Source of the DNA: Octopus bimaculoides
Lineage: Eukaryota
Assembly: GCF_001194135.2 (NCBI RefSeq)
Contig: NC_068981.1
Span: 115,839,045 to 115,903,044, forward strand
Direction of reading: 5' to 3'
Length of the DNA stretch: 64,000 nucleotides
Each line of letters begins with the position of its first letter. The stretch's first letter is position 1. Both the position numbers and the translations under genes were made by a program. The notes under the pieces were generated by a model, which saw nothing but the letters and a program-made list of their open reading frames with translations, searched no databases and had not been told where the DNA came from. This document shows, one piece after another, positions 100 to 64,000 of this stretch.

Positions 100-790
100 G
101 ATATTAGCGTAGACACTTGAAAAAAATCTGCAACTTGGACACCAAGGCTAAGACGATACTGACACATCACCTATCATACTGACAAGATCTTTGTTAAACG
201 GAGGGATGGAACTAAAGGCATAAAATCAGTCCAAACGACTTTTCATTGCTTCATTGTGTCACTTAGGTAACACATATTGAACAGGAAGTGTTGACTAAAG
301 AAATAAGTACATCGCGTGTATAGTCATAGTGAATGTAACATCATCATTAAATTAAGCAAAGGACTCCGGGTTTACAGCTGCTCCATGTGAACCAAGGCTG
401 GTTGGACTGATTGATATATTTAGAGACTTGGAAGATAAATACTTATCATACCAGCAAAAAAGTACAAGAAAAAGAAAATTATACATGGGTATTATCGCGC
501 AAGCTAGCGAATGCCAACAACATTGACAGGAATAGCAGCTTCTCTTGGACTTGTGATAAGTACATTACATCTTATTAGAAGGTTGTGCCTTTACTGTCTA
601 AGAACAGAAAATAGACTTTAAATACCTACTTGATCAACATAAGAGATATGGATGCATCTAAACCTCCATGTTGTGACAGAAGGGTCGATTGTTCCAAAAT
701 TATGAGTAAGGCATCACTCACGGAACGTCTATTAGAGATTTTTTATACCTATATACCATATCCCACGACTGTGATGGCTATATCCTCGAT
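100..790 (+). mobile_element. Decayed R4-clade non-LTR retrotransposon fragment (post-RT region)
   Basis: Fragmentary translation gives DKIFVKRRDG (cf. DRLYLKSKQGGR at 40507-41256), NNIDRNSSFSWT (cf. SNIDHQSSVSWT) and a degenerate Cys-region. Many stops and frameshifts. Confidence 0.6.
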
Positions 791-8960: not shown

Positions 8961-11362
8961 CAGGCTAGTCGCTATTTATGTACCCAACATTATGGGCCCG
9001 CAAAGTGAATATTTTCGTGACCTTGGCAAGTTCCTGGCCACGTCGCATTCACTAGTATTGTTAGGAGACTTTAACAGAATATATGACGCACACACAGATT
9101 GTGTTGGCTCAAACATGAACAGAAAATGTAACCCAGGCTTACGGGATCTGCTAAGTCACTTTCAGCTAGCAGATCCATATAGCTTGGAACACCCGAACAC
9201 TCCACAGTGTACGTGGTCAAATAGTGACGGGTCTTCCAGAACATATCTATATAAGATTTTAATTAGAGAAACAGATAAGTCCATAGCTAAGTGTCCACAA
9301 TTTTTTCTAGTCAGCTACAGTGACCACAAGATGGTTACCTGTAAACTAACGGTAGATAAGTGGCATAGTCAGGGATCTGGCTACTGGAAACTCAATATGT
9401 TCCTTTTGGCGATTGGGAAGTACAGAACGCGGATCGAGATGTTTGTACAGAGGGCATTAACAGGTACCATCATTAGTGGTACGCCCTAAAAAGAGCCATC
9501 AAATATGAGACTATTAAGTTTAGCATAAGTTTAGCTAAGAAGGGACGTAGAATAGGAAATTGTCTAGTTAAGGAACTAGAAGAAACTTGGAGGACTGGTA
9601 ATGCGGACCAAGCGAGGTTGAAAAGACTGGAGTTAAACCAGCATCTTGACGCCCAACACATGGGAAGTATTGCCAGAGCTAAGTTACGTGCGATGAGAAG
9701 TGAAGGAATCAATGCCGTTGGAAGGGCCCGAGTGGTGGAAGCTCGACAAGGAAATAGTTCCACTATTCGGTCTTTGACGAATCAAAATGGTGTCTTGGCA
9801 AGCGAACCCACCCGAGAAAATGTGTGAGGCCTTTTGGGAGTACTTCGCCCAGCTGTTCGGAGGTGACGGCGGTCCTGGTGATGGGAGAGCTCTCGAGGAC
9901 TTTCTTGCCGGGCTGTCGTGTCTCTCGGGGTCGGATGCGGAGTCTTGCGAAGAGTCAATTACGCTAGTGGAGGTGATGGAGGCTTTGGCCGACTGTAAAG
10001 CGAGTAAGTCGCTGGGACTTGATGATCTTCCGTACGAGCTGTATAAATGTATGCCAGACTTGTTCGGGAATCTACTGGCTGACGTTTACGCGAACTGGCA
10101 ACAGAATGGGTTTATCCCCATATCTGTGCGCCGGGAAGTAGTGATGTTGGTCAGAAAGGACCCGGACAAGGGTGACGTTATAGAGAATTTCAGGCCCATC
10201 ACTCTGTTAAACGCAGAAGTGAAGATTTTGGCCAAGGTCTTAGCGAAAAGGTTGGCGCGTGTCGCGAATGGTATAGTCGGGGAGGCACAGACATGTGCCA
10301 TCGCAAGCAGAACCATTCAGGATACCCTCCATCTTATTCGCTATACCATAGAGAGAGTTGATAATAAATCTGCTAAAGGTGGGGCATTGGTACATTTGGA
10401 CCAGTCTAAAGCTTTTGATAGGGTTGACCATCGATACCGGGCGGCTGTGCTTGCGCGGTTCGGCCTGGACCTTGGCTTCCTCAGGTGGTTTATCGCTTTG
10501 TACCACAACATTGACTCGATAGTTNNNNNNNNNNNNNNNNNNNNNNNNNNNNNNNNNNNNNNNNNNNNNNNNNNNNNNNNNNNNNNNNNNNNNNNNNNNN
10601 NNNNNNNNNNNNNNNNNNNNNNNNNNNNNNNNNNNNNNNNNCACTTTTGTATGTAGTGGCTCTCGAGCCCCTACTGCGAAGGCTGAGTGGCATCCCGAGA
10701 GAACCACGTCTGGAGGAGTTTGTTTGGGCTGACGCGGATGATATCACTATCAGCGTAACCTCAGTAGCACGACTACGTGAAGTGGGAAAGACTATTGAGG
10801 CTTACGAGGAGGTGGCAGGAGCAAAGATTAGCCGGGAAAAGTCGGTCGGCTTGCAGCTCGGCACCTGGGTTGGCAAGTCGATGCCTTCAGACAGCGTTGT
10901 TGGGCGCTAGACGGAGAGACCGGTTAAGTTGCTGGGACTTGGTTTTGGACCAGGCCTCCAGGTAGAGAACTGGACAGAGGTATTGAGCAGAGTGGCTGCA
11001 GTAGTCAAGACAAAGTCTTGGCGGTGGCTATCCCTGAAAGGGAGGGCGGAGGTGGCCAATGTGTTTATTGCATCGGTCATTACCTACCGCCTGACCGTCG
11101 TGCCCTGTCCGGATTCATGGTTGATCAGGTTGGAGAGACAGCTCTTTCACTTTTTGTGGAAGTGCAGGTCGCCACTTGTTATACGCTCTGTCTGCTGTCA
11201 AAAGCCTTTAGAGGGAGGTTTAGGGATGCCTTGGTTAATGATGCGCAGGCATGCGTTGAGATTGAGGTACCTCTGGATTCTCCTGGATAGTGAACGGGTG
11301 TGGTCTCCGCTGGCCAGACAAATGTTCCCCGAGTTCAAAAGTTTTTGCAAACAGGAAGCCTG
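8961..11362 (+). pseudogene. Tx1 ORF2 (AP endonuclease plus reverse transcriptase), frameshifted
   Basis: APE motifs AIYVPN, LLGDFN, SDHKMV, GSGYWKLN. RT motifs NFRPITLLNAEVKILAKVLAKRL, LDQSKAFDRVDH, DADD (mutated YADD), GAKISREKS, SLKGRAEVANVFIAS. The APE N-terminus is deleted at about 8960. Confidence 0.92.
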
Positions 11363-16290: not shown

Positions 16291-16418
16291 ACTTTAACTT
16301 TGTACGGAGAGAAAGGTATACATAAATACATATATGTATTTATATATGTCTATATGTACGTACATACGTCCGTACATACATACATACACACATACATGCA
16401 TGCATGCATACATACATA

Positions 16419-18696
16419 GATATGAGAAGTAAAAAGAGGACACTCCCTTGCAAACTGATTATCCTCAAGCAGGAGCTAAAAGATATCAGTGAGAAACTCC
16501 GACATCAGAAAAGAATAACCGAGAGAAAAACAATAAACAAAAATTCAACTAGAACCAAGCAGAGACATCAGAGGTAACATCAGAGGAGACATACAGAGAC
16601 ATTAGAGGAGAAGCAATGAACATCACAGAACCATCTTCTCGAAAAGACACACTTCTGGAGGAAAAGCTGGATCAAAGAGAAGTAGTTTAATCAAGATGCT
16701 CTGCGGTTGCAAAAAATTCGAAGAAGTTATTGTCCATGCATTACCCCAAGACACATAGCATTGATGGTGATACCTTTATAACTGCGATCCAGAAACTTCA
16801 GGATAGAAAAACACCTGGAAGAGACTTGATTGTTAGATATTAGTTCAAGAAGCTAACTTCCTACCGACCATATCTTATGAACCTGTACCAGGAAGCTCTC
16901 AATGGAAATAGTAGCATATCACACTGTTTCCCAAATGCAGAACTACCATCATGGCAAAAAAACTACCGGCTAATTGCATGCCAAAACCCTAGTGTATAAG
17001 ATATATACAACATGTTTAAACCTCCTCCTCCAAGACCATTGTGAAAGCGATAGCATTATTACAACAGAACACGCAGCCGGGAAGAATGGAGTCTGGGTAT
17101 GTGCCGAGAAATTGTTAATAAACAAAATGTAATGTCAAAGATGCGGTGGAATAGAAAGAACCTAGTTTCAATGTGGCTAGACTACAAGAAAGCCTTTGAC
17201 TCTCTTCTAAACTCATGGATGCTAGAAGCCCTTCAGTTTACTAAAGTTCCAGTGAACATAGTTAAAGCCATAGCTAACTTGACTTCATCGTGGGCCACCA
17301 CCTTGAAATTAAACACAAAGAGTGACTGTATTATCACTGATAGTATACAGTGTCACAGAGGCATATTCCAAGAGGACAGCCCCTCTGTGATGTTGTTTGT
17401 ACTTTCTGTAAACTCCTTGTCATTCATGTAAGGAAGTCTGAAAGATATCTCACTGGTTCACATGGGAACAGAAATACCATGGCCGCAGTTAAATGACTGA
17501 AAAATTAAAAGAGTAAAAGAGTAATGGCACTTGTAACAAAATAAGCGCCACTAAAGAATATTACAGTCGAATAAAGAAAATTTGGAGCTTTCTGCATTAG
17601 AAAAAACAAAAAAACTACATCTCACAATTTGTTTGCAGTACCAGTACTTATACCAACATTTGGGTTGCTTGAATTGATGCTTGATGAGATCCGAAGCTGA
17701 GACTTGGAAAGCAACTCCTTGAGAAGCATTCCTTGTCTGATAACTTTAAATACATGTCCAAATATGTCGTACGATTCTATTCAATGTATCATTAGTATGT
17801 GCGTATGTGCAATGTATCAATATGTGCGTATATTAGCAGACGACCATACATAGATACGTAAGTAGAAAACTCCGAGATGATAGTAACATTGATCATCAAA
17901 GCAGTCTATCATAGACTAACAACTAGATTACAACCTCCCACTTTGATGGGGCATGCATTTGCAATTTAGGAACAGGAAATATCAACCAAATACGTGATGC
18001 ACAAAAAGGATATAGACTTTGTGGAGTTAACACCAGAGATATCACACACATCATAAGCAGTTGTCCAAAAATGTCATCACGGTATTATCTACCAGTGAGC
18101 AATGATGTTGTAACTAAGACACTGTGTAACGAGATCCGCCGAAAAGATAACTTCGAGGACAAAAAAATAAGAACCCACAATATGGTAGAAGCCATAGCCA
18201 CTCATATCAAAAAGGAGTAGTGGTGGAATGTCCCAGTGAAAACCTCATATAAAATGTTAGCACAATAGTCCTGATATAATGATTTAGGATAGAGAATAGA
18301 AACTGTGTACAGTTGCGGAAATCAGCTGTCTAGCGGATGTTAACATAAAGGTGAAAATCAGTGAAAAAGAGACTACTTACGCTGAACTATTGAGAAATCT
18401 GCAGTTATCCTATCCAGATTACGAGTTCACGTTTATACCTGTAATTATTGGAGCACTGAGATATGTAGCACACTGCCTAAATAGTAATTTTGAGAAATTA
18501 AGCTTCTCAAAACCAGAAGGGAGAAAGTTGATTTGAAGTCGACAGAACCAATTCATCATTGGAACTGAAGAAATTTGTAAAACTTTCGAGTTTATCATTT
18601 AGTTATATATACCAGCATGTCAAGATATGCAAGTATATGTATCAGAAGACAGATAAAGCATACAAATCTGCACGTATACATACATACATACATACA

Positions 18697-18725
<29 letters not shown>
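16419..18725 (+). mobile_element. R4-clade (restriction-like endonuclease) LINE, (CATA)n-associated family, copy A
   Basis: RT motifs WLDYKKAFDS and GIFQEDSPS (17099..17431), IISSCPKMS, and the RLE tail YAELLRNLQLSYPDYEFTFIPVIIGAL (18351..18536). Starts right after (CATA)n and ends in a (TACA)n tract. Confidence 0.85.
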
Positions 18726-18727
<2 letters not shown>

Positions 18728-25935: not shown

Positions 25936-26350
25936 GTTTGGGAATTGCTCATACATATACATATGCATGTATATATGTGTGTATGTATGTATGTATGGAT
26001 GTATGTATGTATGTATGTATGTATGTATTCGTGTATGTGAGTGTGTATGTATGTGTGTCTATATGGATGAATAAGTCAATTGAATGAACATAGTTATTCC
26101 TAATGAAACAAGACTAAAAATTTTAAGACAATATAGGAATATAAGCAAATATATTGAACATCATATTCTTACTGAAATGTATGATTACAGAGAGTATTCT
26201 TTCAGTTGTTATAAACAAGCTAGTTTCTCATCGAGCACGTAATTAATTAAAGTGGAGTCTCCTTTTCAGAAATGTGAGCTGAATCAACTGGCCATAGTAT
26301 ATTTGCATACACATACATACATACATACATACATACATACATACATACAT

Positions 26351-26712
26351 ACCAGAATAACACACTATCTAAGTACCAGTCTTCAGAAATTAGGCTTCTC
26401 AAAACCAGAAATGAGAAAGCTGATTCAAGACTACAAACCCAAGCCGTACTGTAAAAATCTATGAAGCTTACCAAAAGTTCATCATTTTAACATACAAGCA
26501 AATATATAGACATGCAACTGTATGCCTGAGAATACAGACATAAAACAAAACGAACAAATCTCTACAGGCACGAACTGCAAATAATATACATGTACACACA
26601 TACATGCAAAAAAACCTTGATGTTGAAATTTTAATGAAGGAATCTTGGATCTAGGTTAGAAAACGACTCTTTCTCAATCAGTAAGATGTCTTGAAATAAA
26701 ACTGAATAATGA
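26351..26712 (+). mobile_element. 5'-truncated copy C of the (CATA)n-associated R4-clade LINE
   Basis: QKLGFSKPEMRKLI tail plus 3' UTR ending CTGAATAATGA|CATAC; (CATA)n on both sides. Confidence 0.85.
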
Positions 26713-26811
26713 CATACACACGTAGAATATACATAAATGCATACATACAGACGTAAATACATACATACATACATACATACATACATACATACACACATAC
26801 ATGCATACATA

Positions 26812-27167
26812 ATACGTTATTGGGACCCTGGGATATGTAACACACTGCCTAGATACCAATCTTGAGAAATTAAGCTTCTCAAAACCAGAAAGAAGAAAGC
26901 TAATTCGAAGACTACAGATCCAATCCACCACTGGAACTGTAGAAATCTGTAAAACTTTCCAGAGGTTTATCATTTAAATGTATATGATCATGTCTAGATA
27001 TGTAACTATATGCATGAGAATACATAAACCACACAAATCTGCACACATACATACATAATACATACATACATACATACATGCATATAACAATGAAGGAACC
27101 TTAGGTCTAGGTTAGAAACCGGTTCTTCCTCTATTGGCAAGAAATCTTGAGATGAACTGAATAACGA
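26812..27167 (+). mobile_element. 5'-truncated copy D of the (CATA)n-associated R4-clade LINE
   Basis: VIGTLGYVTHCL..EKLSFSKPERRKLIRRLQIQSTTGTVEICKTF plus 3' UTR ending CTGAATAACGA|CATAC. Confidence 0.88.
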
Positions 27168-27879
27168 CATACATACGTACATATATGCATACATACATAT
27201 ATACATACATACATACATACATACATACATTNNNNNNNNNNNNNNNNNNNNNNNNNNNNNNNNNNNNNNNNNNNNNNNNNNNNNNNNNNNNNNNNNNNNN
27301 NNNNNNNNNNNNNNNNNNNNNNNNNNNNNNNNNNNNNNNNNNNNNNNNNNNNNNNNNNNNNNNNNNNNNNNNNNNNNNNNNNNNNNNNNNNNGTACATAT
27401 ATGCATACATACATATATACATACATACATACATACATACATACATTGCAATAACTATTGATCTCACAAAAACAAGTGAAGAATGCAAAGTACTGAAATC
27501 ACAGCTTGCACCCAAAGTTCAAACAGAACTTCACTACTTAAAAAATGACATGATAGTTAAAATGAATAGGAGGGAATTTGAACGATCGGGTTGTTGATGG
27601 AGAGGAATGGTCAGTGGTACAAAGACGAAACTAGGACATTTGTGATAAAAGTGAGTAACTCTTACTATGAATATGAATAAAAATGTCACAAGTTATTAAA
27701 AGTCGCAGATAATTAACATTTCTTAAAAACGCTCCAAGGGGAAATTTATATCAGAAGAAATAATGCAGCTAACGAAGTATGGGACCTCCATTGCAGAAGG
27801 GTATGTGAATTAAATGAACAGAGTTAAACATAAAAATGTAAAAATGGGAAGGAATTAAAGTTAATGCAAATATCAATTG

Positions 27880-32970: not shown

Positions 32971-33310
32971 AGAGTGGAAAACCAAATTGTACTCAAGTAA
33001 TGTATTCCTTGGAGAAGTTAATATTAAAAGGGGAATCTTCTTAGGTGGCTCGTTTTCTGTGTTACTATTTGTAATTGCATTAAGCCCATAACAGTGACAC
33101 TTAAGAAAGTTAAGATGGGTTACCGATGTGGGAAGAAAGGCCCATTGTTGAACCATTTTTTGTTCATAGATGGCCTGAAATTGTTTGGGAAATCTGAAAA
33201 ACATAGATTCCTTAACCAAAACAGTCCAGAAGTGTGGTAGGGACATCGGTATGGAATTTGGGATTACCAAATGCTCCATACTTAATATGAAACGAGGGAA
33301 GAAAGCAGCC
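32971..33310 (+). mobile_element. Dong-like (R4 clade) RT fragment abutting (AAT)n
   Basis: EVNIKRGIFLGGSFSVLLFVIALSP, LNHFLFIDGLKLFGKSE and DIGMEFGITKCSILNMKRGK (RT domains 4-7). Begins immediately after about 20 AAT units. Confidence 0.8.
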
Positions 33311-33729: not shown

Positions 33730-35550
33730 GTGTAAGTAACAGAGCATCGGTCTTCCCGTGAGTCATCAAGGACCGTATTCCTCAGTGGGCAAACGAGCTG
33801 AGGTCAAAAAATTGGTGTCTAGGTAACACTCCTTTGAAGATTGATCCGAGGAATCGTGATCGCTGACATTGCAAATCGAACACCAACATTAGTTGGTGTA
33901 TTCAAAGAATTAGAAATATATGGATACGCGAAGTATATAAACAGGTTGTATCAACACTGAATAAACCAGAAAGAAAGATCACTGAGTGATGCTGAAACAA
34001 TGTCGGAAGTAACGCTTGGGAATATGTAATCCGAAACAAATTAGCAAATGTACATAGTGACATCAAGCGTATCCGTAGACTTACTCATGCTGAAATAGAA
34101 ATTATCAAAATTACTGTTAGCACTAGTATAAATGATGACAATGAAGAGTAGAAATTAACAACGTGAATTTAGAGGGAATACTATAGTTAATAAAGCACAA
34201 CATCAAGTTGGATCATGCGCCGGAATATGAAGCCCATCAAAAGCAAAATAATGCACCAAAACCTGAAGGCCTTCATGAATTAGAAACCAATTTACTAGCT
34301 TTGTTTACAGAAGACGACATTGACAAAATTCAAGACGCAAAAGTGACAACAAACATGAATACAATATCTCACAACATCCAGAAATGAACAGCTACCTAAA
34401 TTCCAAGCGAACAAGTCTAGCCTACTTGTTATAAAAGTTTATGACTACACCTTAAAAGAAATTCTTGCAGAGTTTAAATGCGGCTTGACTTCATTAAATT
34501 ATCTCATATATGCAGCATCATACGCAACTTCTAAGGAAACAGGTATCACAATAAAGAAAAGGGGTCCCCCAAAAGATCAAACAAAACAACCAACATCCAT
34601 AGGTTTGATAAGAGAAGTAACTTCTACAGACAAAACAAAACATTCAGAACGGAAGCAAAAAAAAAAAAAAATTACAGAGAACTTTGAAAGCAAACATCAG
34701 AAATTCAGGACCCGCTTGAAATGCATGAAGTAGAAACGTTCAGGAACAGTATATGAAATAATAACAGGGAATTTAATGAAATGTCTGAACGGATCACAAG
34801 AGATGAACAAAAAGTGGTGAAATGTACAAGATCAAATTGGGGAAGATATTTCTGTCAAGGAACTGAAAGAAGCTTTGTGAAAAGCTCGTAAATGGAAATC
34901 TCCCGGGCATGATATGATACAAAAGTTTTTGTTGAATACCCTGACAACATCAGATGCAAAGATCAACTTCTGATTGACCGAATGATAGTTGAAAACTGGT
35001 CCTCTATAATCTTAGTACAGCTTCGATATCACAAGGCATTCAATAGGGTCCCTCCCTCGTGGATCGCAAAAGCTCTGGACTTGTATAAAATATCACCATA
35101 AAGATTTTCTTTGTCAAAGTATGGGTGCGTGGTACATAAAATTGTACTTTGACCATAATAAAGGCATAAGTACATCTGGCAACCAACGTATATTCCAAGG
35201 AGATTCGTTGTCGCCATTAGTCTTATGCTTAAAACTTATATCTCTGTCACATGAACCGAACATGCACAATATGAATACAAAATCTTCGATAGAATCATCT
35301 CACACTTCTTTCATGTGGATTGCCTCGAGCTATATGCAAAGAATGATAATAATCTGGAGGGATTACTAACAACTGTGAACAGTTTTAGTAGCAATATTAA
35401 CATAAACTTTGGCTTGGATAAGTGCACCGAGAAAACTCATTTCTGTATAGTCCATTACACTAAATGACAACACTGTTATCTATTAGAGCAGAAATAGAGC
35501 ATACAAATATCTGGAAATAAATGAAAGTGTGTGTTCGAGCACATGGTAAG
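33730..35550 (+). mobile_element. Decayed R4-clade LINE (N-terminal region plus RT), 3'-truncated
   Basis: KLANVHSDIKRIRRLTHAEIEIIK, KWKSPGHDMIQ, KAFNRVPPSWI, IFQGDSLSPL, LYAKNDNNLEGLL and FGLDKC in shifting frames. Confidence 0.78.
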
Positions 35551-39920: not shown

Positions 39921-39944
39921 ATCATATATATGTATGTACGTATG

Positions 39945-42315
39945 TCATTATTCAGTTTATTTCAAGATTTCTTGCCAATAGAGAAAGAACCGGTTTCTAA
40001 CCTCGATCCAAGGTTCCTTCGTTGGAATTTCAACCCCAACAGCAGGGTATCTTTGTTTGTATGTATGTATGTATGTATGTATGTATGTATTTGCAGATTT
40101 GTGTGTTTTATGTATGTATTCTCATGTATATAGTTAATACCTAGACATCTAGTCACATATCTAGATATTTAAATGATAAACATCTGGAAAGTTTTACAGA
40201 TTTTACAGTTCCGGTGGATTAGATCTGTAGTCTTCGAAGTAGCTTTCTCCTTTCTGGTTTTGAGAAGCTTAATTTCTCAAGATTCGTATTTAGGCAGTGT
40301 GTTACATATCCCACTGCCTCAATAATTACAACCTGAGCTCGTAATCTGGATAGAGTAACTGCTGACCTCTCAATAGTTCAGTATAGGTGTTCTCCTTTTC
40401 ACTGATCTTCAGATTTATGTTAACATCCGCTGGGCAGCTAATTTCCCTTCTCTGCTAACATTTTCTTGGGGTCTTCACTGGTACAATCCACCAGTATTCC
40501 TTTTCATTATGAGTGGCTATGGCTTCTACCATATTGTGGGTTCTTCTTTCTTTCTTTGTCCTCGAGATTATCCTTCCGACGGATTTCATTATAGAATTTC
40601 CTAGCTACAAAGTCATGTCTCCTCGGTAGATAATACCGTGGTGACATTTTCGGACAACTGCTTATGATGTGGGTGATATCTTCAATGTGAACTCCACAAA
40701 GTCTGCATCGGTTGTCACATTTTACGGCTTTTACAGCATCTGTATCCCTTTTGTACATCAGGAACTTGGTTGATATTTCCTGTTCCTGGATTGCAAAAGC
40801 ATACCCTTCAAAGTGGGAGGTAATAATCCGGCTATTGGTCCATGATACACTGCTTTGATGATCTATATTACTATCATTACGGAGCTTTCTACTAACAGTG
40901 CCATGTATAGCCTTCTGCTCATATAGACTCATCCTTTCATCTGGTGATATGTTGCGGTAGAGTCCTGCGACCTCTTTGGGCAAGTATTCTAGGTTATCAG
41001 ACAAAGAGTGTTGCTCAAGGAGCTGCCTTCCAAGTCTTATGATGTTATCATCTTCATGTATGCAAACTTGGTCAAGGGATGGACTTCGACATTTGGTGGT
41101 TAAAAGATGTTGCCGAAGGGATATGATAAGACATTCAAAGGCATTTTGGATCGATGTCAAACTTCTGCCGCCTTGTTTAGATTTTAGGTAGAGACGGTCT
41201 GCGTCACTGTTTATCTGGAAACTATGTGTGCTTGTTAGTATTTTTCGGGTTTTCACATCAATGGCTCAGATCTCGTCACGCGTTCAATCAAGCAGCCCAA
41301 ATGTTGGTATGAGTACTGGCACTGCAAACACACAGTGGGTTACTGTTTTATTGAATGCAGAGAGTTCTGAGGTTCAAATTTTCTTTATTCGGCTGTAATA
41401 TTCTTTAGTGACACGTTACAGGTGCCATTGTAAGATATATTTTTATCTACCCCTAGATACCTGTAACATCCCACGTCTGATAGAGGAGAAACAGTCAAAT
41501 CATTGACGGAGATGCTACTAGTCTGTTTTATAGTCTTCCTCCTTTTCACAACCATATAGCCACATTTGTCCTGACCAAACTCTAACCTTACATCCTTTGA
41601 GAATGTTGTAACTAGGTCAAGGATCTTCTTCATCTCATGCATATTCTTTGCATAAATTTTATGCCATCCCAAAGAAACAATGGTATTTCTGTTTCCTTGT
41701 GAACCAGTGATATATCCTTCAGACTTCCTTAACATGAACGAAAAGGGGTTTACAAAAAGTATAAAGAGCATCACAGAGAGGCTGTCCCCTTGGAATATGC
41801 ATTTGCGATATTGTATTCTATCGGTTATAATACAGTCACTCTTTGTGTTTAATTTCAAGATGGTGGCCCATGATGAAGTCAGGTCAGCTAAGGCTTTGGC
41901 TATTCTCACTGGAACTTAAGCAAGTTGAAGGGCTTCTAGCATCCATGAGTGGGGAACAGAGTCAAAGGCTTTCTTGTAGTCTAGCCACATTGGAACTAGG
42001 TTCCTCCTATGCTCTCTCACCTCTGACATCACAGTTTTGTTGATTAATAATTGCTTCACACATCTCCAGACTCAATTCTTTCCAGCTGCTTGTTCTGCTT
42101 TGATAATGGTATTGGATTCACAATAATCTTGGAAGGAGAGGTTTAAACATGCTGTATATATTTTATGCATTAAGTTCTGGCATGCAACTGGTAGTTGGTT
42201 TTTTCCATGTGGGTGGTTCTGCATTTGGGAATCAATTTTGTGTCTGCCAGAACTAGCCAGTGTGTTATGCTAATGTTCCCAATGAAAGCTTGTTGGTACA
42301 GATTCATAAGATATG
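39945..42315 (-). mobile_element. R4-clade LINE, (CATA)n-associated family, copy B (best preserved)
   Basis: RT (41385..41909 IFQGDSLSVMLF, FGQDKC, YRYLGV; WLDYKKAFDSVPHSW near 41950) and CCHC finger RCRLCGVHIEDITHIISSCPKMSPRYYLPRRHD (40507..41256). 3' end CTGAATAATGA|CATACGTACATAC; 5' end joins (CATA)n. Confidence 0.9.
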
Positions 42316-42326
42316 TATGTATTATG

Positions 42327-42360
<34 letters not shown>

Positions 42361-42376
42361 TGTATGTATGTATGTA

Positions 42377-42423
<47 letters not shown>

Positions 42424-42793
42424 TAGCTTTCAAAGAATATATTTCTAAGTATCGTAAACATGTGTGAATGATCACTATGATATGAGCAGAGTGACAACGC
42501 TTTTTCCACAATATCTTCTTCAAAATTTCTTTTGAGTTACATAATAATACACACCCATCCCATACACGTACGAACTGGATTAAATTTTGTGTACCGGATT
42601 ATGCAGTAAAAGACTGATGCCAGGAGAGATAAGCAAGTGCATAAGATTATGGAAATTCACCCTTTCATTCGTTCGATAAGAGAGTAATAATAGGAAATAT
42701 TCATCATAGAAATTTAGACAGTAGTCGATAAACTATTTAAGTTCTTGTTTGTATTTGATATCGTTCCACTGCTATATATTATTGATGTTGTTG

Positions 42794-42831
<38 letters not shown>

Positions 42832-43037
42832 GTTGTTGTTGTTGTTGCTGTTGTTGTTGTTATCATCATCATCATCATTATTATTATCATCATCATCGTC
42901 GTCATCATTATTATTATTACTATTATTATTAAAGTACAGTTCAGCACTGGGGTCAATGTAATCGATTTATCCCCTCCCCAGTTGCTGAACTTGTGCCAAA
43001 ATTTGAAATCATTATTATTATTATTATTATTATTATT

Positions 43038-43808
43038 AAATCTCTCGGGTAGTTCTTAATAACCGGTTATTCTTTACTTGAAAGCAGGCAGTAACAAATC
43101 ACCAAGGGTTTCAAGTGGTACCTTCTCCTGTGATTCAAACAGACAAAACTCGCCTTAGAATGCGAACTGTATCTCCTCGAGCCTGACAGCAGCTGCAATA
43201 TTCTCGTCCCGCAGTGGCTGGTATTTCTCAGTCTTTTCTTTTTCGTTAGATTTTACCCTCGAATCGCCTGGTATTGCAACATCTATTATCTTTATTTCTT
43301 TTTCGTCTTTATGGATGAGCACGAAATCTGATCATCTCACCTCTATGATTTCGTCGCACTGCATGTTAAAATCCCAGAATATTTTTCAATGTTCGTTTTC
43401 CATTACTCCCTCTGGCTTGTGTTCATACCATTTTTCGGCTTATTCAACGTTTGCTTTACTGCACAACAGCCAGTGGCGATATTTGGCCACATCGTCGTGT
43501 CTTCTATATTCCTGTTGTCCGAGCTTACAGCACTCACTAACAATATGGCTTATACTTTCTCCCTCCTCACAGTGGCAAGTCAGTGCTTTTATCAATGTGA
43601 TGTTTGGAGTAGTTCGTTCTTAGAGCTTGTTCTTGAGCGCTGCACACTAATGCCTCATTGGGCCCTTTTAAGACTCCTTTCTGCAGCCATTGCCAGGTTC
43701 TATTCCAAGCAATCTCATCTTCATTCTTCAAGAACTGACTGTGCATTTTCTTGTCCTGCCAAATTTTCTTCATCTGCTCTCTCGGGTCTTTCATAATTTG
43801 TGTTGGAT
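43038..43808 (-). mobile_element. Dong-like LINE 3' fragment (CCHC plus RLE) ending in (TAA)n
   Basis: WQWLQKGVLKGPNEALVCSAQEQALRTN, WYEHKPEGVMENE, IIDVAIPGD and EKTEKYQ. 3' end ...CCCGAGAGATTT|AATAATAAT. Confidence 0.88.
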
Positions 43809-43820
43809 CGTTCCCTAGTA

Positions 43821-43877
<57 letters not shown>

Positions 43878-43886
43878 GTCTATCTG

Positions 43887-43929
<43 letters not shown>

Positions 43930-44740
43930 CACACTCTCTTTCTCTCTCTCTTTCTCTTTCTCTCTCTCTTTCTCTTTCTCTTTTTCTCTCTCTCTCTCTT
44001 TCTCTTTCTCTTTCTTTCTCTCTCTCTCTCCCTCCCTCTCTCTCTCTCTCTATATATATATATATGCATATATTCACATATATGTATAAATATACATATA
44101 TATGTGTGTGCGCGTGCGTAGGAAAGAGAGAGAAAGACAGAGAAAGACAGAGTGAGAGAGTGTGTGTGTGTGTGTGTATGTGTGTGTGTGTGTATGTATG
44201 TGTGTGTGTATGTGAATGCACATACACACTTGCACGTTCATACACGTATATCTGGGCAGTGAAAATAGCAAGGAAGTGAGCCAGCTGTAAACAAGAGCAA
44301 CATGAACAACAACAGCAGCAGCAGTAACAACAGCCAGAAGAGTAACATTTCCAATGCGTCAACATATTTACAGCTCTTTCACTTAACGGCTGAAAGGGTC
44401 GGCAGGTCAGATAAGAATCTCACAAAGTTAACAAACAGACACGTAGATAATGTATTGAAATATTCCTACCCACCCATTCTTCTACCCGCAATTTTTTCTT
44501 ACACTTATGTTCTTTACCAATCCTTACACTATTTCTCGTATATTCTCGCGCAGTCTCTTTATCTCCCCATCCTTTTAATAGACGTCACACACATCTGTAT
44601 GTACTGCTTATGTGAGTTGCGATCCCAGACTTCACGATTTATATCCACTGTGAGTGTCTCAAAACGAGTACTCGCACAAATTTTCTACATATTTACTGAA
44701 ATGATTTATCTCCTCCTACTTAGTACGTTTCATATATTCT

Positions 44741-44947
44741 TTTCTGCTCTAGACACAAGGCTCGAAATTTTTGGTGGAGGGGGCCAATCGATTACATCAA
44801 CTCCAGTACGCAACTGGTACCTTAATTTATCGAAAGGATGAAAGGCAAAGTCGACCTCGGCGGAATTTGAACTCAGGTCGTAAAGACAAACGAAATGCCG
44901 CCAAGCATTTCGCCCGACGTGCTAACGTTTCTTCCAGCTAGCCGCCT
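44741..44947 (-). mobile_element. SINE family A, full length
   Basis: Close reverse-complement match to the split copy. Confidence 0.9.
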
Positions 44948-50214: not shown

Positions 50215-50432
50215 ATATTGATTTCAAATTTTGGCACAAAGTCAGAAGTTTCGGAGAAGCAGGTAAATCGATTACATCGATTTCAGTGCACAAGTGGGAT
50301 TTATTTTATCGACTTCAAAAGGATGAAAGGCGAAGTCAACTTCGGTGGAATTTGAACTCAGAGCATAAAGACGGACGAAATGCCGTTAAGCATTTTGCCC
50401 GGCGTACTAATGATTCGGCTAGCTCGCTGCCT
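50215..50432 (-). mobile_element. SINE family A
   Basis: Reverse-complement head, B box and tail. Confidence 0.85.
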
Positions 50433-53691: not shown

Positions 53692-54570
53692 TCACTCTTT
53701 CAGGAGGTCGAATTTATATTAATATTTTATTTTCTATTTCAACAGCCTTTCCCAGGATATAAGCTTCTGAAAAATTTCGCAATCCTTGCTTTAGCTTTGG
53801 TTGTTACAGTCAAGGCACCCACTACTACTATGACTTCACCATTTTCATATTTTGTAAATTTTTCTCTTCAAGTTTTCATGCTCCTCAAACTTTTCCTTTT
53901 CTGTTTCAAGTATTTCATTTTACGATCCTCTGGTGATGCTTCATCGACTATCGCAAATTTTTTCTCCTTTTCAACCATAAAAATATCATTTCTTCACTCA
54001 TGAATCCTGTGATCACATTGGATGTGTTGAAACCCCACAGTAGTTTCACTTCATTTGATTCTACAGGGAGTTTCACCAGCTTCCTGTTCTGCATTCTCAC
54101 ATAACTTTTTGTTTCTCACATAACTTCCTGACAATGTTATCATGTCTCTTCTTGTGTTCTATTTATGCTCATGTACAACATGGCATACTATTATTCCTTT
54201 CATTCCACATAGATTACTTAATGGAGACTATAATCTTGACGAAATTATAACTCATATAATTAATTCTGAGAGATTGTTTTTGTGCTGCGCATATTAAAAT
54301 TTTGGTCTAAATCTTAAGGACTGGTCTTCATATCCATTACAATAATGCTTCCTTGTCTACTCTTCTTTCCATGCATCAATATTTCCTCCATTTTTCTGTC
54401 TCTTCTATCATTTTCCAGCTTATTAGCATATGACACCAATTTTCCTCTCCTTAAAATCAGTACAACATGCTTCTTGATCACGAAGTCCATTCGGATATCT
54501 TTATTGAATATGAGAACTACATTTACCAGTACATTTATTTGGTATGTGCTGCTCAGTCATTGATGTGTTT
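53692..54570 (-). mobile_element. Older Dong-like LINE relic (RT end plus RLE) ending at TAATAAT
   Basis: FNKDIRMDF..VLILRRGKLV, ESNEVKLLWGFN..QCDH..AIVDEASPED and VVVGAL. 3' end AAAGAGTGAT|AATAATA. Confidence 0.6.
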
Positions 54571-57951: not shown

Positions 57952-59189
57952 CACACGCATATACATATGTAGGGGAAGCAAACAAACAACAAATAAAACA
58001 ATCAGAGAAAAGAATAGTGCTTGCGTTTGCATTGTTAAGCTCTTTGCATGCAAATTGGGCTACACTGGTTCAATGCCCGGTACCTGCGGTTTATATTAGT
58101 AATCAGTTATCTGAAGATTAATTGATTGCGCCAATCAGAATTGATTATGTTACATCAGATATATAATGATGACTATATTGTTTGAATCAGTGTAATTTCG
58201 TAATCTCTAAGCAGATCTACAGCGAGAAAGGGTTCAACCGAATGATTAGGTGTAGAAGGGTGGATGTCATCATATGCTATATATTCTCCTCTCTCTAGGT
58301 TGTTCCTGTAAGGTTCTAAGTCTGGTAGATCCCACATTGTTATTTTAGTTAATAGATGATCAAATTACAAAGGATCATCTATACTAGTATTAATCTTGTT
58401 TGAACTGGTTTACTTTGTGCTATTATAGTGGTCAGATGCACAGCGGATGGGAATATTCTTTGAAAATCAACGGAAAAAATTTATGGTCAACTGTTTGCAA
58501 ATCTGTGGATTCCTCACCCAGATTTATAAATTTACTCTTTTACTCATAATCATTGGTACAGCTGGTTGTATTATTAAATGTTTAAGTTGAAATCTGAAAA
58601 ATAATAAAACAAAATGGGTGTTTCAGATAAGGAAATAGACCAGCTACTTTCATTGATGTTCTGTAAATTCCAAAAATGGGGCTTTGTTTCTTTGTTAAAG
58701 ACCAACTGGTTCTTTGTAGAAAGAATTTTAAAAAGTTCAAAAGACAGGCGCACAAATATACACGTATGGATATAATATGAGAATGTATTAAATGATGATT
58801 GTCTATTTATATGCAGTTGGTATAACTCTGAAACGACAACCAAAGAGATACCTAGAGTCTTGGTATATAAGGAAAGTAGCTATTCAGAGTAAAAAAAAAG
58901 CAGCAATATAAGCGGAATGAGAGTTTTATCTAGCAAAAGTAAATATTGCTGCAAAAAATTAAAAATGCGTTATTGGCAGAGAAACAACAGTTTTTGTCTT
59001 TATTTTTGCTTTTATTTGTTCAAGCGTCATATGCAAAGCTGTCTCATTAAATTTTTCCAATACCAAATGTGATTCAAGGTAATGACTGAAGAAACAAACA
59101 GGATAGGAGGAAGTTCAGAATGGATGAAACAATTTTTAATCTGAAGTAAAAGTAATAGACGTCAGAAAACTTATGACAGTATGGCCTGT

Positions 59190-60299: not shown

Positions 60300-60466
60300 T
60301 TAATACTGGTTTCAAATTTTGGCAGAAGGCCAGTAATTTCGGTGTGGGTTAAGTCGATTACATCAACTCCCGTGCTTAACTGGTACTTGTTTCATCGAAC
60401 CCGAAAAAATAAAAGTCAAAGTCAACCTCGGTGGAATTTGAACTCAGAACGTAAAGACGAACGCCG
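60300..60466 (-). mobile_element. SINE family A, 5'-truncated
   Basis: Reverse-complement B box and tail. Confidence 0.8.
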
Positions 60467-63426: not shown

Positions 63427-64000
63427 CATGCATATATTTGAACAAGTAAGTAAGTATATTTCACCGAGTTAGTAGGAAAATAAGGACCCATTGTTAGCCA
63501 AGCATTATGTACAAGCTTTACAAAAGCCGTTTCACCAATTCATCCAGAATCATTGTCTTCAACAACAGTGACAGATGGAAAAAGTATGTGTTAGGGTGTG
63601 TCAAATAATTTTGATGAACAAAGCTATGCTTTCCGAAGGAAGAAGGCATCGCAGAAACCTTGTGATATCATAGCATTCAACTATATTCCCGGCTACTGAA
63701 GTCTCTATACATGGCAATAGGTACCTGTTAGCTTAATTGCTATAACTGAGAAGCTCACAAAGACCTGTGTCAAAATTCTCACGCTTACATTCGAGATATT
63801 TTTATCGTTTCGGATATTATAAATATTTCAATGCAAATACTCCAACGAGATAATCTTTAAGATTAAAATAGTCACTTCTTCTACAAACGTCCAATGGCTA
63901 CATGCTTGAGTCCACAATGGCTAGAGATACCAACATAAGTCATAACACCTATGCGAGCGGCCAGAGTTTTTATGCATATATATAGATGCATATATATATA

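What the first reader, a model, noticed from the sequence alone, without database searches (positions are those of the whole stretch)
39931..42377. R4-clade LINE family apparently specific for (CATA)n/(TACA)n microsatellites
Seen: all three intact 3' ends of this RLE-encoding family finish at the same base and repeat phase: CTGAATAATGA|CATAC (26712), CTGAATAACGA|CATAC (27167) and, on the minus strand, CTGAATAATGA|CATACGTAC (39945). The differently truncated 5' ends (16419, 26351, 26812, 42315) all abut (CATA)n. There is no poly(A). Established: R4-clade elements with restriction-like endonucleases are often site-specific (R4 in 28S rDNA, Dong in (TAA)n). Inference: a tetranucleotide (TACA)n target, which I do not recall being reported; it would help explain the TACA richness of this genome.
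Basis: partly seen in the sequence, partly recalled or inferred. Interest (0 to 1): 0.8.

Follow-up and report, generated by a model that had tools for sequence, protein, structure and literature searches.

The report
LINE retrotransposon that targets (CATA)n microsatellites
An old, dead family of Dong/R4-like jumping genes in this octopus sequence sits inside (CATA)n microsatellites at both ends of every copy, and related elements in other public assemblies do the same, so this lineage inserts specifically into that repeat, a target not reported for its clade in the papers I could search.

Summary
The window, almost certainly Octopus, holds four degenerate 5'-truncated copies of one non-LTR retrotransposon family that encodes a restriction-like endonuclease (RLE). 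They are A 16419-18726(+), C 26353-26712(+), D 26812-27167(+) and B 39945-42315(-).

- **3' ends:** B, C and D end at the same base, ...CTGAATAA(T/C)GA|CATA.
- **5' ends:** all four truncation points differ, and all abut same-strand (CATA)n. Only 0.4% of strand-specific 20-mers in the window match (CATA)n at 18/20 or better.
- **Related elements:** full-length and truncated relatives (38-49% amino-acid identity) from five other public samples are also flanked by (CATA)n. Where the base before the repeat allows a call, the 3' junction is always |CATA.
- **Other groups:** a nested sister family is flanked on both sides by (CTTA)n. The more distant group at about 30% identity is classical Dong, flanked by (TAA)n.

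The repeat is therefore a target, not merely an element-encoded tail.

Clade assignment is only partly tested. The family is sister to (TAA)n Dong-type elements and far from R2, but I had no R4, Rex6, HERO or NeSL references. I found no published (ACAT)n target in R4/Dong. Waldo, an R1-clade element with a different endonuclease, targets (ACAY)n.

The suggestion that the family explains the genome's TACA richness is untested.

The parts
39945..42315 (-). Copy B: 5'-truncated, degenerate element. It holds the reverse transcriptase from about residue 426 of a 1158-aa relative, the thumb region, the CCHC motif, a partly deleted RLE and the 3' UTR.
   Evidence: Self-BLAST, translations, tblastn with P0024. 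Several frameshifts and in-frame stops. The PD part of the RLE is deleted relative to copy A and L001.
39945..40046 (-). 3'-terminal module of about 100 bp, ending ...CTGAATAATGA. It is shared by B, C and D and absent from A.
   Evidence: Alignment A2 and nhmmer. The predicted hairpins are not better than shuffled sequence (z -1.09), with one compensatory pair.
40047..40090 (-). Internal (CATA)n microsatellite inside the 3' UTR.
39923..39944 (-). 3' flank of B: short (CATA)-like tract, CATACGTACATACATATATA.
   Evidence: 18/20 match.
42316..42424 (-). 5' flank of B: degenerate CATA-like sequence, then perfect (CATA)n at 42331-42377, then (TA)n.
16419..18675 (+). Copy A: the longest copy, from about residue 283 of a 1158-aa relative. 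Heavily degenerate. Retains the PD..E..K RLE motif.
16357..16418 (+). 5' flank of A: (CATA)-like microsatellite.
   Evidence: 18/20 match.
18676..18726 (+). (CATA)n in which copy A ends. It corresponds to the internal repeat of B and D, and the terminal module is missing.
26353..26712 (+). Copy C: 360-bp 3' fragment with an intact 3' end.
26305..26352 (+). 5' flank of C: perfect (CATA)n. No older copy lies upstream.
   Evidence: 20/20 match.
26713..26811 (+). (CATA)-like spacer between the tandem copies C and D. It is the 3' flank of C and the 5' flank of D.
26812..27167 (+). Copy D: 356-bp 3' fragment with an internal (CATA)n and an intact 3' end.
27168..27231 (+). 3' flank of D: (CATA)n that runs into the assembly gap at 27232-27392 and resumes at 27393-27446.

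Best explanation
These are dead copies of a Dong/R4-like non-LTR retrotransposon whose lineage integrates specifically into (CATA)n/(ACAT)n microsatellites in one fixed orientation.

**Shown here.**
- Relatives encode a single ORF of about 1150 aa. It has an N-terminal three-helix domain, a reverse transcriptase, a CCHC motif and a C-terminal PD-(D/E)xK restriction-like endonuclease.
- Every copy examined has the cognate repeat at its 3' end, starting |CATA.
- Every 5' end that could be defined, full-length or truncated, has it too.

**Inferred by analogy with R2, R4 and Dong.**
- The protein, probably through its N-terminal DNA-binding domain together with the RLE, recognises (CATA)n duplex DNA and nicks the (TATG)n strand.
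- The freed 3'-OH primes reverse transcription of the element RNA.
- That RNA probably ends in a few CAUA units read through from the donor site. These pair with the nicked repeat, which fixes the junction register.
- Incomplete reverse transcription gives 5' truncation.
- The cDNA end is joined to the upstream repeat by microhomology, for example CATAT in copy B.
- Because each insertion keeps the repeat on both sides, later insertions land next to earlier ones and make head-to-tail arrays (C and D here, and the copies in L006 and L008).
For: **Window.**
- Identical 3' ends and phase in B, C and D. Four different 5' truncation points all abut same-strand (CATA)n.
- Background 0.4% at 18/20 or better.

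**Independent assemblies.**
- Full-length elements flanked by (CATA)n on both sides: L002 (88 bp and 92 bp), L003, L004, the second copy in L006 and the second copy in L008.
- The truncated first copy in L008 has 92 bp on its 5' side and 924 bp on its 3' side.
- L011 shows the 5' flank only.
- In L002 the (TACA)n arms lie between (GATA)n tracts on both outer sides, as expected for insertion into a pre-existing compound microsatellite.
- Most upstream repeats are not tails of older copies.

**Junction register.** The junction is unambiguous where the preceding base cannot belong to the repeat...GAC|CATA in L003 and ...TCC|CATA in L006 and L008.

**Repeat tracks phylogeny.**
- A nested family (P0034/P0073; L005 with three copies, L013-L015) has (CTTA)n at both ends with the junction |CTTA.
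- The group at about 30% identity has (TAA)n (L007, L010, 17 metagenome loci, and a fragment in this window).
- The two groups split with 100% bootstrap.

**Protein.** RVT_1 at E = 4e-13. R2 structures are the best solved relatives and include the CCHC region. The invariant residues are D1048 and K1079, with E1063 nearly invariant.
Against: - No empty (pre-insertion) site was seen, and target-site duplications cannot be read inside a repeat.
- No biochemical data exist on cleavage.
- All copies in the window are old (72-83% identical to each other) and dead.
- The flanks of B are short or degenerate: 22 bp on the 3' side, and 16 bp of imperfect repeat before the perfect tract on the 5' side.
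- The 5' end of the first copy in L006 is unresolved. One candidate flank is (TATG)n, the opposite orientation.
- Microsatellites of many kinds are dense here, with 5.8% of the window in perfect simple repeats. The neighbouring Dong-type fragment abuts a non-cognate (GATA)n at its truncated 5' end, so adjacency to some repeat is not in itself remarkable.
- The host organisms of the related loci are unknown.
Confidence: 0.8

Rival explanations
1. (CATA)n is an element-encoded 3' tail, as in CR1, L2 and Rex1-type LINEs. The upstream repeats would then exist only because new copies home into the tails of older copies. The element would follow its own tail rather than recognise genomic (CATA)n in general.
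For: - Head-to-tail arrays occur: C and D in the window, and the copies in L005, L006 and L008.
- The octopus family carries its own internal (CATA)n.
- The constant junction register is equally expected from a templated tail.
Against: - For A, B, C, L002, L003 and L004, the sequence upstream of the 5' repeat shows no 3' end of an older copy.
- In L002 the repeat arms sit symmetrically inside a compound (GATA)n/(TACA)n microsatellite.
- Repeats on the 5' side run to 88-924 bp.
Confidence: 0.1
2. Passive association. The copies insert without sequence preference but survive, or accumulate, in microsatellite-rich regions of low recombination. This was proposed for Waldo-A and Waldo-B near CA repeats in Drosophila (PMC3812793).
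For: The window is very rich in simple repeats (5.8% perfect). A Dong-type fragment abuts a non-cognate (GATA)n.
Against: - The junctions are base-precise and strand-specific.
- The probability by chance is about 1e-5 to 1e-7 in the window alone (my estimate from the frequencies).
- The same repeat flanks relatives in five other samples.
- A different repeat, (CTTA)n or (TAA)n, tracks each phylogenetic group.
Confidence: 0.04
3. The repeats arose after insertion, by slippage starting from CATA-like sequence at the element's ends.
For: The element contains CATA-rich stretches and an internal repeat that clearly expands and decays.
Against: Four different internal truncation points, with unrelated adjoining element sequence, could not each seed the same repeat in the same strand and abut it without a transition zone. 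Full-length relatives with unrelated 5' ends show the same flank.
Confidence: 0.03

Closest known systems
Dong (Bombyx mori and relatives; R4 clade)
   Same: - A single ORF with a reverse transcriptase, a CCHC motif and a C-terminal RLE.
- An alignable N-terminal domain.
- Insertion into a microsatellite in a fixed orientation, with the repeat on both sides, no poly(A) and frequent 5' truncation.
- The (TAA)n-flanked group is the nearest group in my trees.
   Different: - The target is (TAA)n in Dong and is reported as such in most insects, molluscs and cnidarians (PMC7998251). Here it is the tetranucleotide (CATA)n.
- Only about 28-32% amino-acid identity.
- Dong has an HDV-like ribozyme at its 5' junction (PMC3774820), and I found one in the Sitophilus element L010. 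I found none in the (CATA)n group, but the search was insensitive.
R4 (Ascaris and other nematodes)
   Same: An RLE-bearing LINE of the same clade as Dong, and strictly site-specific.
   Different: Its target is a site in 28S rDNA, not a microsatellite. No R4 sequence was available for comparison.
Waldo (WaldoAg1/2, WaldoFs1; R1 clade)
   Same: It targets (ACAY)n microsatellites, which include (ACAT)n, the same repeat class (PMC3812793).
   Different: Waldo encodes an apurinic/apyrimidinic-type endonuclease at the N-terminus and belongs to the R1 clade, so the similarity is a convergent choice of target. It occurs in insects.
Microsatellite-specific RLE LINEs outside R4: Togen, specific for (TG)n, and some HERO families (PMC4640811)
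   Same: RLE-bearing LINEs that target microsatellites.
   Different: Different clades (near NeSL, and HERO) and different repeats. I could not place my sequences against HERO or NeSL references.
'Dong-R4' LINEs annotated in octopus genomes (PMC13282606, PMC8967140)
   Same: Probably the same superfamily label. It is reported as abundant in octopuses, and five families are reported as recently active in O. vulgaris.
   Different: Those papers, searched for Dong-R4 and microsatellite terms, describe no insertion target or microsatellite association.

Membership tests
R4/Dong clade of RLE-encoding non-LTR retrotransposons | Single ORF with a reverse transcriptase followed by a CCHC motif and a C-terminal PD-(D/E)xK restriction-like endonuclease, and no apurinic/apyrimidinic-type endonuclease | tested here: met
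   - RVT_1 at E = 4e-13.
- R2 structures are the best solved matches and include the CCHC region.
- CCHC, RHD and PD...E...K motifs are seen in copy A, L001 and relatives.
- Full-length relatives carry only the RVT_1 Pfam hit.
R4/Dong clade of RLE-encoding non-LTR retrotransposons | Reverse transcriptase groups with R4, Dong and Rex6 to the exclusion of R2, NeSL, CRE and HERO | tested here: inconclusive
   - The family is sister to a group of (TAA)n-flanked Dong-type elements, with 100% bootstrap for the split.
- It sits on a long branch from the R2 outgroup.
- E is about 1e-90 with 95% coverage to the Sitophilus element, against 1e-20 to R2.
- No R4, Rex6, HERO or NeSL references were available.
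R4/Dong clade of RLE-encoding non-LTR retrotransposons | Site-specific insertion into a repeated target | tested here: met
   (CATA)n flanks both ends of the copies in the window and in L002-L004, L006 and L008. L011 shows the 5' flank only.
R4/Dong clade of RLE-encoding non-LTR retrotransposons | N-terminal Myb/SANT-like domain without zinc fingers (PMC7998251) | tested here: inconclusive
   - The N-termini of the (CATA)n and (TAA)n groups align, with conserved W...W...P...L.
- The AlphaFold model has three helices at pLDDT 75.
- There was no significant sequence or fold match. The best Foldseek E-value was 0.88, with SANT, Myb and homeobox domains only among weak hits.
- The window copies lack this region.
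R4/Dong clade of RLE-encoding non-LTR retrotransposons | HDV-like self-cleaving ribozyme at the 5' junction (PMC3774820) | tested here: inconclusive
   - My own descriptor finds a canonical fold exactly at UAAUAA|GGGGUGC in the Sitophilus element L010.
- It finds none in four other (TAA)n loci or in any (CATA)n or (CTTA)n element.
- Rfam gave no hit.
- The negative result is uninformative.
Dong in the strict sense | Target is the (TAA)n microsatellite | tested here: not met
   The flanks are (CATA)n. (TAA)n flanks only the distant group.
Waldo (R1 clade) | N-terminal apurinic/apyrimidinic-type endonuclease and an R1-clade reverse transcriptase | tested here: not met
   The endonuclease is a C-terminal RLE, and the nearest solved relatives are R2 proteins.
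LINEs with element-encoded microsatellite tails (CR1, L2, Rex1 type) | The repeat occurs only at the 3' end, and the 5' junctions lie in unrelated sequence with target-site duplications | tested here: not met
   All 11 5' junctions that could be defined in the (CATA)n group abut the cognate repeat.
HERO clade (some families are microsatellite-specific) | Reverse transcriptase groups with HERO references in Repbase | not testable with these tools
   No HERO sequence is held here. It is mentioned only in PMC4640811.

The most novel reading that the evidence does not exclude
The window family may be one tip of a widespread clade of Dong-like elements that has repeatedly changed its microsatellite target. 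(TAA)n marks the classical Dong group. (CATA)n would be ancestral for the sister group. (CTTA)n arose in a nested family, and (CA)n may have arisen in another. The proteins stay alignable throughout, including the N-terminal three-helix domain. That would give a natural series for finding which residues set the target of an RLE retrotransposon, a question now relevant to engineering R2-type insertion tools.
Probability: 0.5. Interest if true: 0.65.

Novelty: new variant of a known kind. Interest (0 to 1): 0.5.

Why it matters
Site-specific RLE retrotransposons such as R2, R4 and Dong are the model for target-primed reverse transcription, and they are now being adapted for programmable gene insertion.

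This lineage is alignable with Dong, and its members use (CATA)n or (CTTA)n instead of (TAA)n. Target choice in the clade has therefore changed while the protein architecture was kept. Several relatives have intact 1150-1200-aa ORFs in high copy and could be expressed and assayed.

For octopus genomics the finding has two consequences:
- Part of the 'Dong-R4' load is confined to one microsatellite class.
- About half of the ACAT tract length in this window is physically tied to such copies. This bears on microsatellite marker design and on assembly gaps.

Tried and rejected
- **L001.** The only named close hit (O. bimaculoides LOC106878562) is an internal fragment with no informative junctions.
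- **Rfam.** Nothing was found in seven related loci at gathering thresholds, or in two 5' UTRs at a permissive E-value.
- **HDV-like ribozyme descriptor.** It works on the Sitophilus Dong element and on nothing else, so it cannot separate the groups.
- **N-terminal domain.** Profile searches against PDB and Pfam, and Foldseek with an AlphaFold model, gave no significant match.
- **3' module structure.** It folds no better than shuffled sequence.
- **Host organisms.** The cluster look-up returned no names.
- **Literature.** Searches for an (ACAT)n target in R4, Dong or Rex6 found nothing.
- **Third protein-database search.** I ran no further search on naming. Its top 120 hits would most likely have been unnamed again.
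- **SINE-like piece within (TAA)n at 42926-43015.** Other copies of it in the window are not flanked by TAA, so I see no link to Dong.
Full report
**What the window is.** The sequence is AT-rich eukaryotic DNA with 12 assembly gaps. The 249-aa ORF at 40507-41256(-) is 72% identical to O. bimaculoides LOC106878562. Every other hit is below 66% identity and unnamed. The window is therefore almost certainly Octopus.

**Copies in the window.** Self-comparison finds four copies of one family:

| Copy | Strand | Coordinates |
|---|---|---|
| A | + | 16419-18726 |
| C | + | 26353-26712 |
| D | + | 26812-27167 |
| B | - | 39945-42315 |

- They are 72-83% identical to one another.
- All are 5'-truncated. 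Against the 1158-aa relative P0024, A begins near residue 283 and B near residue 426; C and D hold only the last 360 bp or so.
- All reading frames are broken by stops and frameshifts. B has also lost the PD part of the endonuclease.

**3' junctions.**
- B, C and D end at the same base...CTGAATAA(T/C)GA, followed by CATAC....
- There is no poly(A).

**5' junctions.**
- A follows ...GCATGCATACATACATA.
- C follows a perfect (CATA)10.
- D follows ...CATGCATACATA.
- B follows a CATA-like stretch that becomes a perfect 47-bp tract 16 bp further on. Its junction shows a CATAT microhomology with the element sequence known from copy A.
- The repeat is always on the element's sense strand.

**Chance.** Only 0.40% of strand-specific 20-mers in the window match (CATA)n at 18/20 or better. 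The four upstream 20-mers score 18, 20, 18 and 12. By my own binomial estimate from these figures, chance probability is between 1e-5 and 1e-7.

The element carries its own (CATA)n about 100 bp before the 3' end. Copy A stops inside that repeat and lacks the terminal module. A either lost the module by recombination between the two repeats or represents a subfamily without it.

**What the element encodes.** A protein of about 780 aa stitched from A and B has these features:
- It matches Pfam RVT_1 at E = 4e-13.
- Its best solved relatives are R2 retrotransposon proteins (E about 5e-20), and the match includes the CCHC region.
- Downstream lie CX2C...H...C, then RHD, then KPD...VEISCP...K. This is the arrangement of a restriction-like endonuclease.
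- In an alignment of 14 relatives the D and K are invariant and the E is nearly so.
- Full-length relatives are single ORFs of 1130-1200 aa carrying only an RVT_1 Pfam hit.

**Target or tail? Evidence from other assemblies.**

| Locus (source) | Copy | 5' flank | 3' flank |
|---|---|---|---|
| L002 (ERZ25878469) | full-length, 3.9 kb | (TACA)22 | (ACAT)23 |
| L003 (ERZ23489101) | full-length, intact ORF | (ACAT)13 | (CATA)13 |
| L004 (ERZ25878469) | full-length, degenerate | (ACAT)n | (ATAC)22 |
| L006 (ERZ25878582) | second copy, full-length | (TACA)15 | (CATA)9 |
| L008 (ERZ25878582) | first copy, truncated | (ACAT)23 | 924-bp (ATAC)n |
| L008 (ERZ25878582) | second copy, full-length | the same 924-bp array | (CATA)8 |
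| L011 (SRR6869048) | 5' end only in contig | (ATAC)6 | not in contig |

- In L002 both (TACA)n arms lie inside (GATA)n tracts, which looks like one compound microsatellite split by the insertion.
- Where the base before the repeat cannot belong to it, the 3' junction is |CATA...GAC|CATA and ...TCC|CATA.
- Counting the window, all 11 5' junctions that could be defined and all 11 3' junctions carry the cognate repeat.
- For A, B, C, L002, L003 and L004 no older copy lies upstream, so the 5' repeat is not simply another element's tail.
- One case is unresolved. The first copy in L006 has two candidate 5' ends, and one of them is preceded by the repeat in the opposite orientation.

**The flanking repeat follows phylogeny.**
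- A family nested among the (CATA)n families (P0034/P0073) is flanked on both sides by (CTTA)n. This holds for three copies in L005 and for L013-L015 from two further samples, always with the 3' junction |CTTA.
- The more distant group, about 30% identical, is classical Dong.
  - L010 from Sitophilus oryzae has (AAT)n on both sides. Seventeen metagenome loci and L007 have (AAT)n as the first simple repeat after the ORF.
  - The window itself holds such a fragment at 43039-43820(-), followed by (TAA)9.
- A neighbour-joining tree on 899 columns splits the (TAA)n group from the rest with 100% bootstrap. It places the window family in a 100%-supported clade with the (CATA)n and (CTTA)n families.
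- A partial R2 outgroup roots the tree between the two groups on a long branch.
- One further family (P0044, L012) has (AC)n-rich flanks, but I have only one locus for it.

**Mechanism.**
- Shown: the anatomy, the junctions, the orientation, the truncation pattern and the tandem arrays.
- Inferred from R2, R4 and Dong biology: the protein recognises (CATA)n and nicks the (TATG)n strand, and reverse transcription starts from that nick. Repeat units at the RNA 3' end probably pair with the target and fix the register. The 5' end is joined through microhomology.
- Dong and R4 release their 5' ends from co-transcripts with an HDV-like ribozyme (PMC3774820). My descriptor found a textbook example exactly at the (TAA)n junction of the Sitophilus element. 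It found nothing elsewhere, not even in other Dong-type loci, so I cannot say whether the (CATA)n group has one. Rfam found nothing.
- The N-terminal domain aligns across both groups and is predicted as three helices. Its Myb/SANT nature, proposed for R4/Dong in PMC7998251, could not be confirmed.

**Comparison with what is known.**
- Microsatellite-targeting LINEs are an established kind: Dong (TAA)n, Waldo (ACAY)n, Mino (AC)n, Kibi (TC)n and Koshi (TTC)n (PMC3812793), plus Togen (TG)n and some HERO families (PMC4640811).
- The Dong target is described as (TAA)n in most insects, molluscs and cnidarians (PMC7998251).
- Octopus 'Dong-R4' elements are reported as abundant, and five families are reported as recently active in O. 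vulgaris. The passages I searched in those papers say nothing about an insertion target (PMC13282606, PMC8967140).
- I found no report of an (ACAT)n or (CTTA)n target in this clade. Repbase and Dfam could not be consulted.
- I therefore rate this a new variant of a known kind. It works like Dong, is not Dong in the strict sense because the target differs, and converges on Waldo's target with a different endonuclease.

**The TACA-richness idea.**
- ACAT is the commonest tetranucleotide repeat in the window: 0.88% of bases in 23 tracts.
- Ten tracts, 288 of 536 bp, touch the four copies.
- That pattern is what target specificity predicts. It does not show that the element creates the repeats.
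- Each insertion does split a tract, and in this family it adds the internal repeat.

**Limits.**
- No empty sites were seen.
- There is no biochemistry.
- The hosts of the related loci are unknown.
- The clade placement lacks R4, Rex6, HERO and NeSL references.
- The sample is about a dozen junctions of each kind.

Noticed in passing
window 43039-43820 (-), (TAA)9 at 43012-43038, (GATA)n at 43822-43930: A second RLE LINE fragment of the classical Dong type. It matches residues 963-1160 of P0090 and is followed by (TAA)9. Its truncated 5' end abuts a non-cognate (GATA)n of about 110 bp, which warns that adjacency to some microsatellite is common in this genome.
   Followed up: partly
window 40047-40090, about 27033-27086, 18676-18726: The (CATA)n-targeting family carries an internal (CATA)n in its 3' UTR. 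Copy A ends in it and lacks the last 100 bp or so. Either recombination between the internal and flanking repeats removed the module, or A belongs to an older subfamily in which this repeat was the 3' junction.
   Followed up: partly
L005 8492-19255; L013 1-60; L014 1-105 and 4836-4871; L015 2768-2853: A sister family nested among the (CATA)n families is flanked on both sides by (CTTA)n, with the 3' junction always |CTTA. It was seen in three samples. This looks like a one-base change of target unit, CATA to CTTA.
   Followed up: partly
L012 1-47 and 4203-4214: The family of P0044 (about 40% identity) has (AC)n-rich sequence at its 5' end and (AC)5 near its 3' end. It may be a (CA)n-targeting lineage, but only one locus was seen.
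   Followed up: no
L006 9630-9665, L008 13829-13865, L011 27-70, L013 60-95, L014 103-135; L004 7095-7125, L005 14905-14930, L006 2600-2620: Full-length relatives share one of two short 5'-terminal motifs. One is a small hairpin followed by GACGTG(T)n. The other is GA(G)GAAGGAGCTC. Neither matches an Rfam family or my HDV-like descriptor. They may be promoter or RNA-processing signals.
   Followed up: partly
L010 7189-7260 (Sitophilus oryzae PPTJ02000818.1): A canonical HDV-like ribozyme fold (P1 GGGGUGC, L3 UCCUCGU, P1.1 GG) starts exactly at the (TAA)n/element junction of a Dong-type element. This agrees with the published self-cleavage of Dong RNA.
   Followed up: yes
L008 12903-13826: A 924-bp uninterrupted (ATAC)n/(ACAT)n array lies between two head-to-tail copies, far longer than the other flanks.
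   Followed up: no
window 42926-43015 (-); also 60303-60388, 50215-50289, 44776-44826: A fragment of an abundant SINE-like octopus repeat (gatttcaaattttggcacaag...) sits between two (TAA)n-rich tracts next to the Dong-type fragment. Other copies in the window are not flanked by TAA.
   Followed up: partly
window 206-679 (+), 58416-58587 (+), 63481-63698 (+), 32975-33301 (+), 34583-35437 (+), 10183-10437 (+), 54422-54544 (-): Further weak reverse-transcriptase or RLE-like fragments. Some are distantly related to the same family (nhmmer and tblastn hits). Others are probably from other LINE clades. Their ends were not examined.
   Followed up: no
window 27232-27392 and 11 other N runs: The window has 12 assembly gaps. 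The gap at 27232-27392 lies inside the (CATA)n that follows copy D, which suggests these repeats break the assembly.
   Followed up: no
clusters of P0022, P0034, P0038, P0060, P0073 and others: Relatives in the unnamed ENA assemblies form clusters at 90% identity with 100-390 members. These include many intact 1153-1197-aa ORFs, so the lineage is young and probably active in those unidentified hosts.
   Followed up: partly
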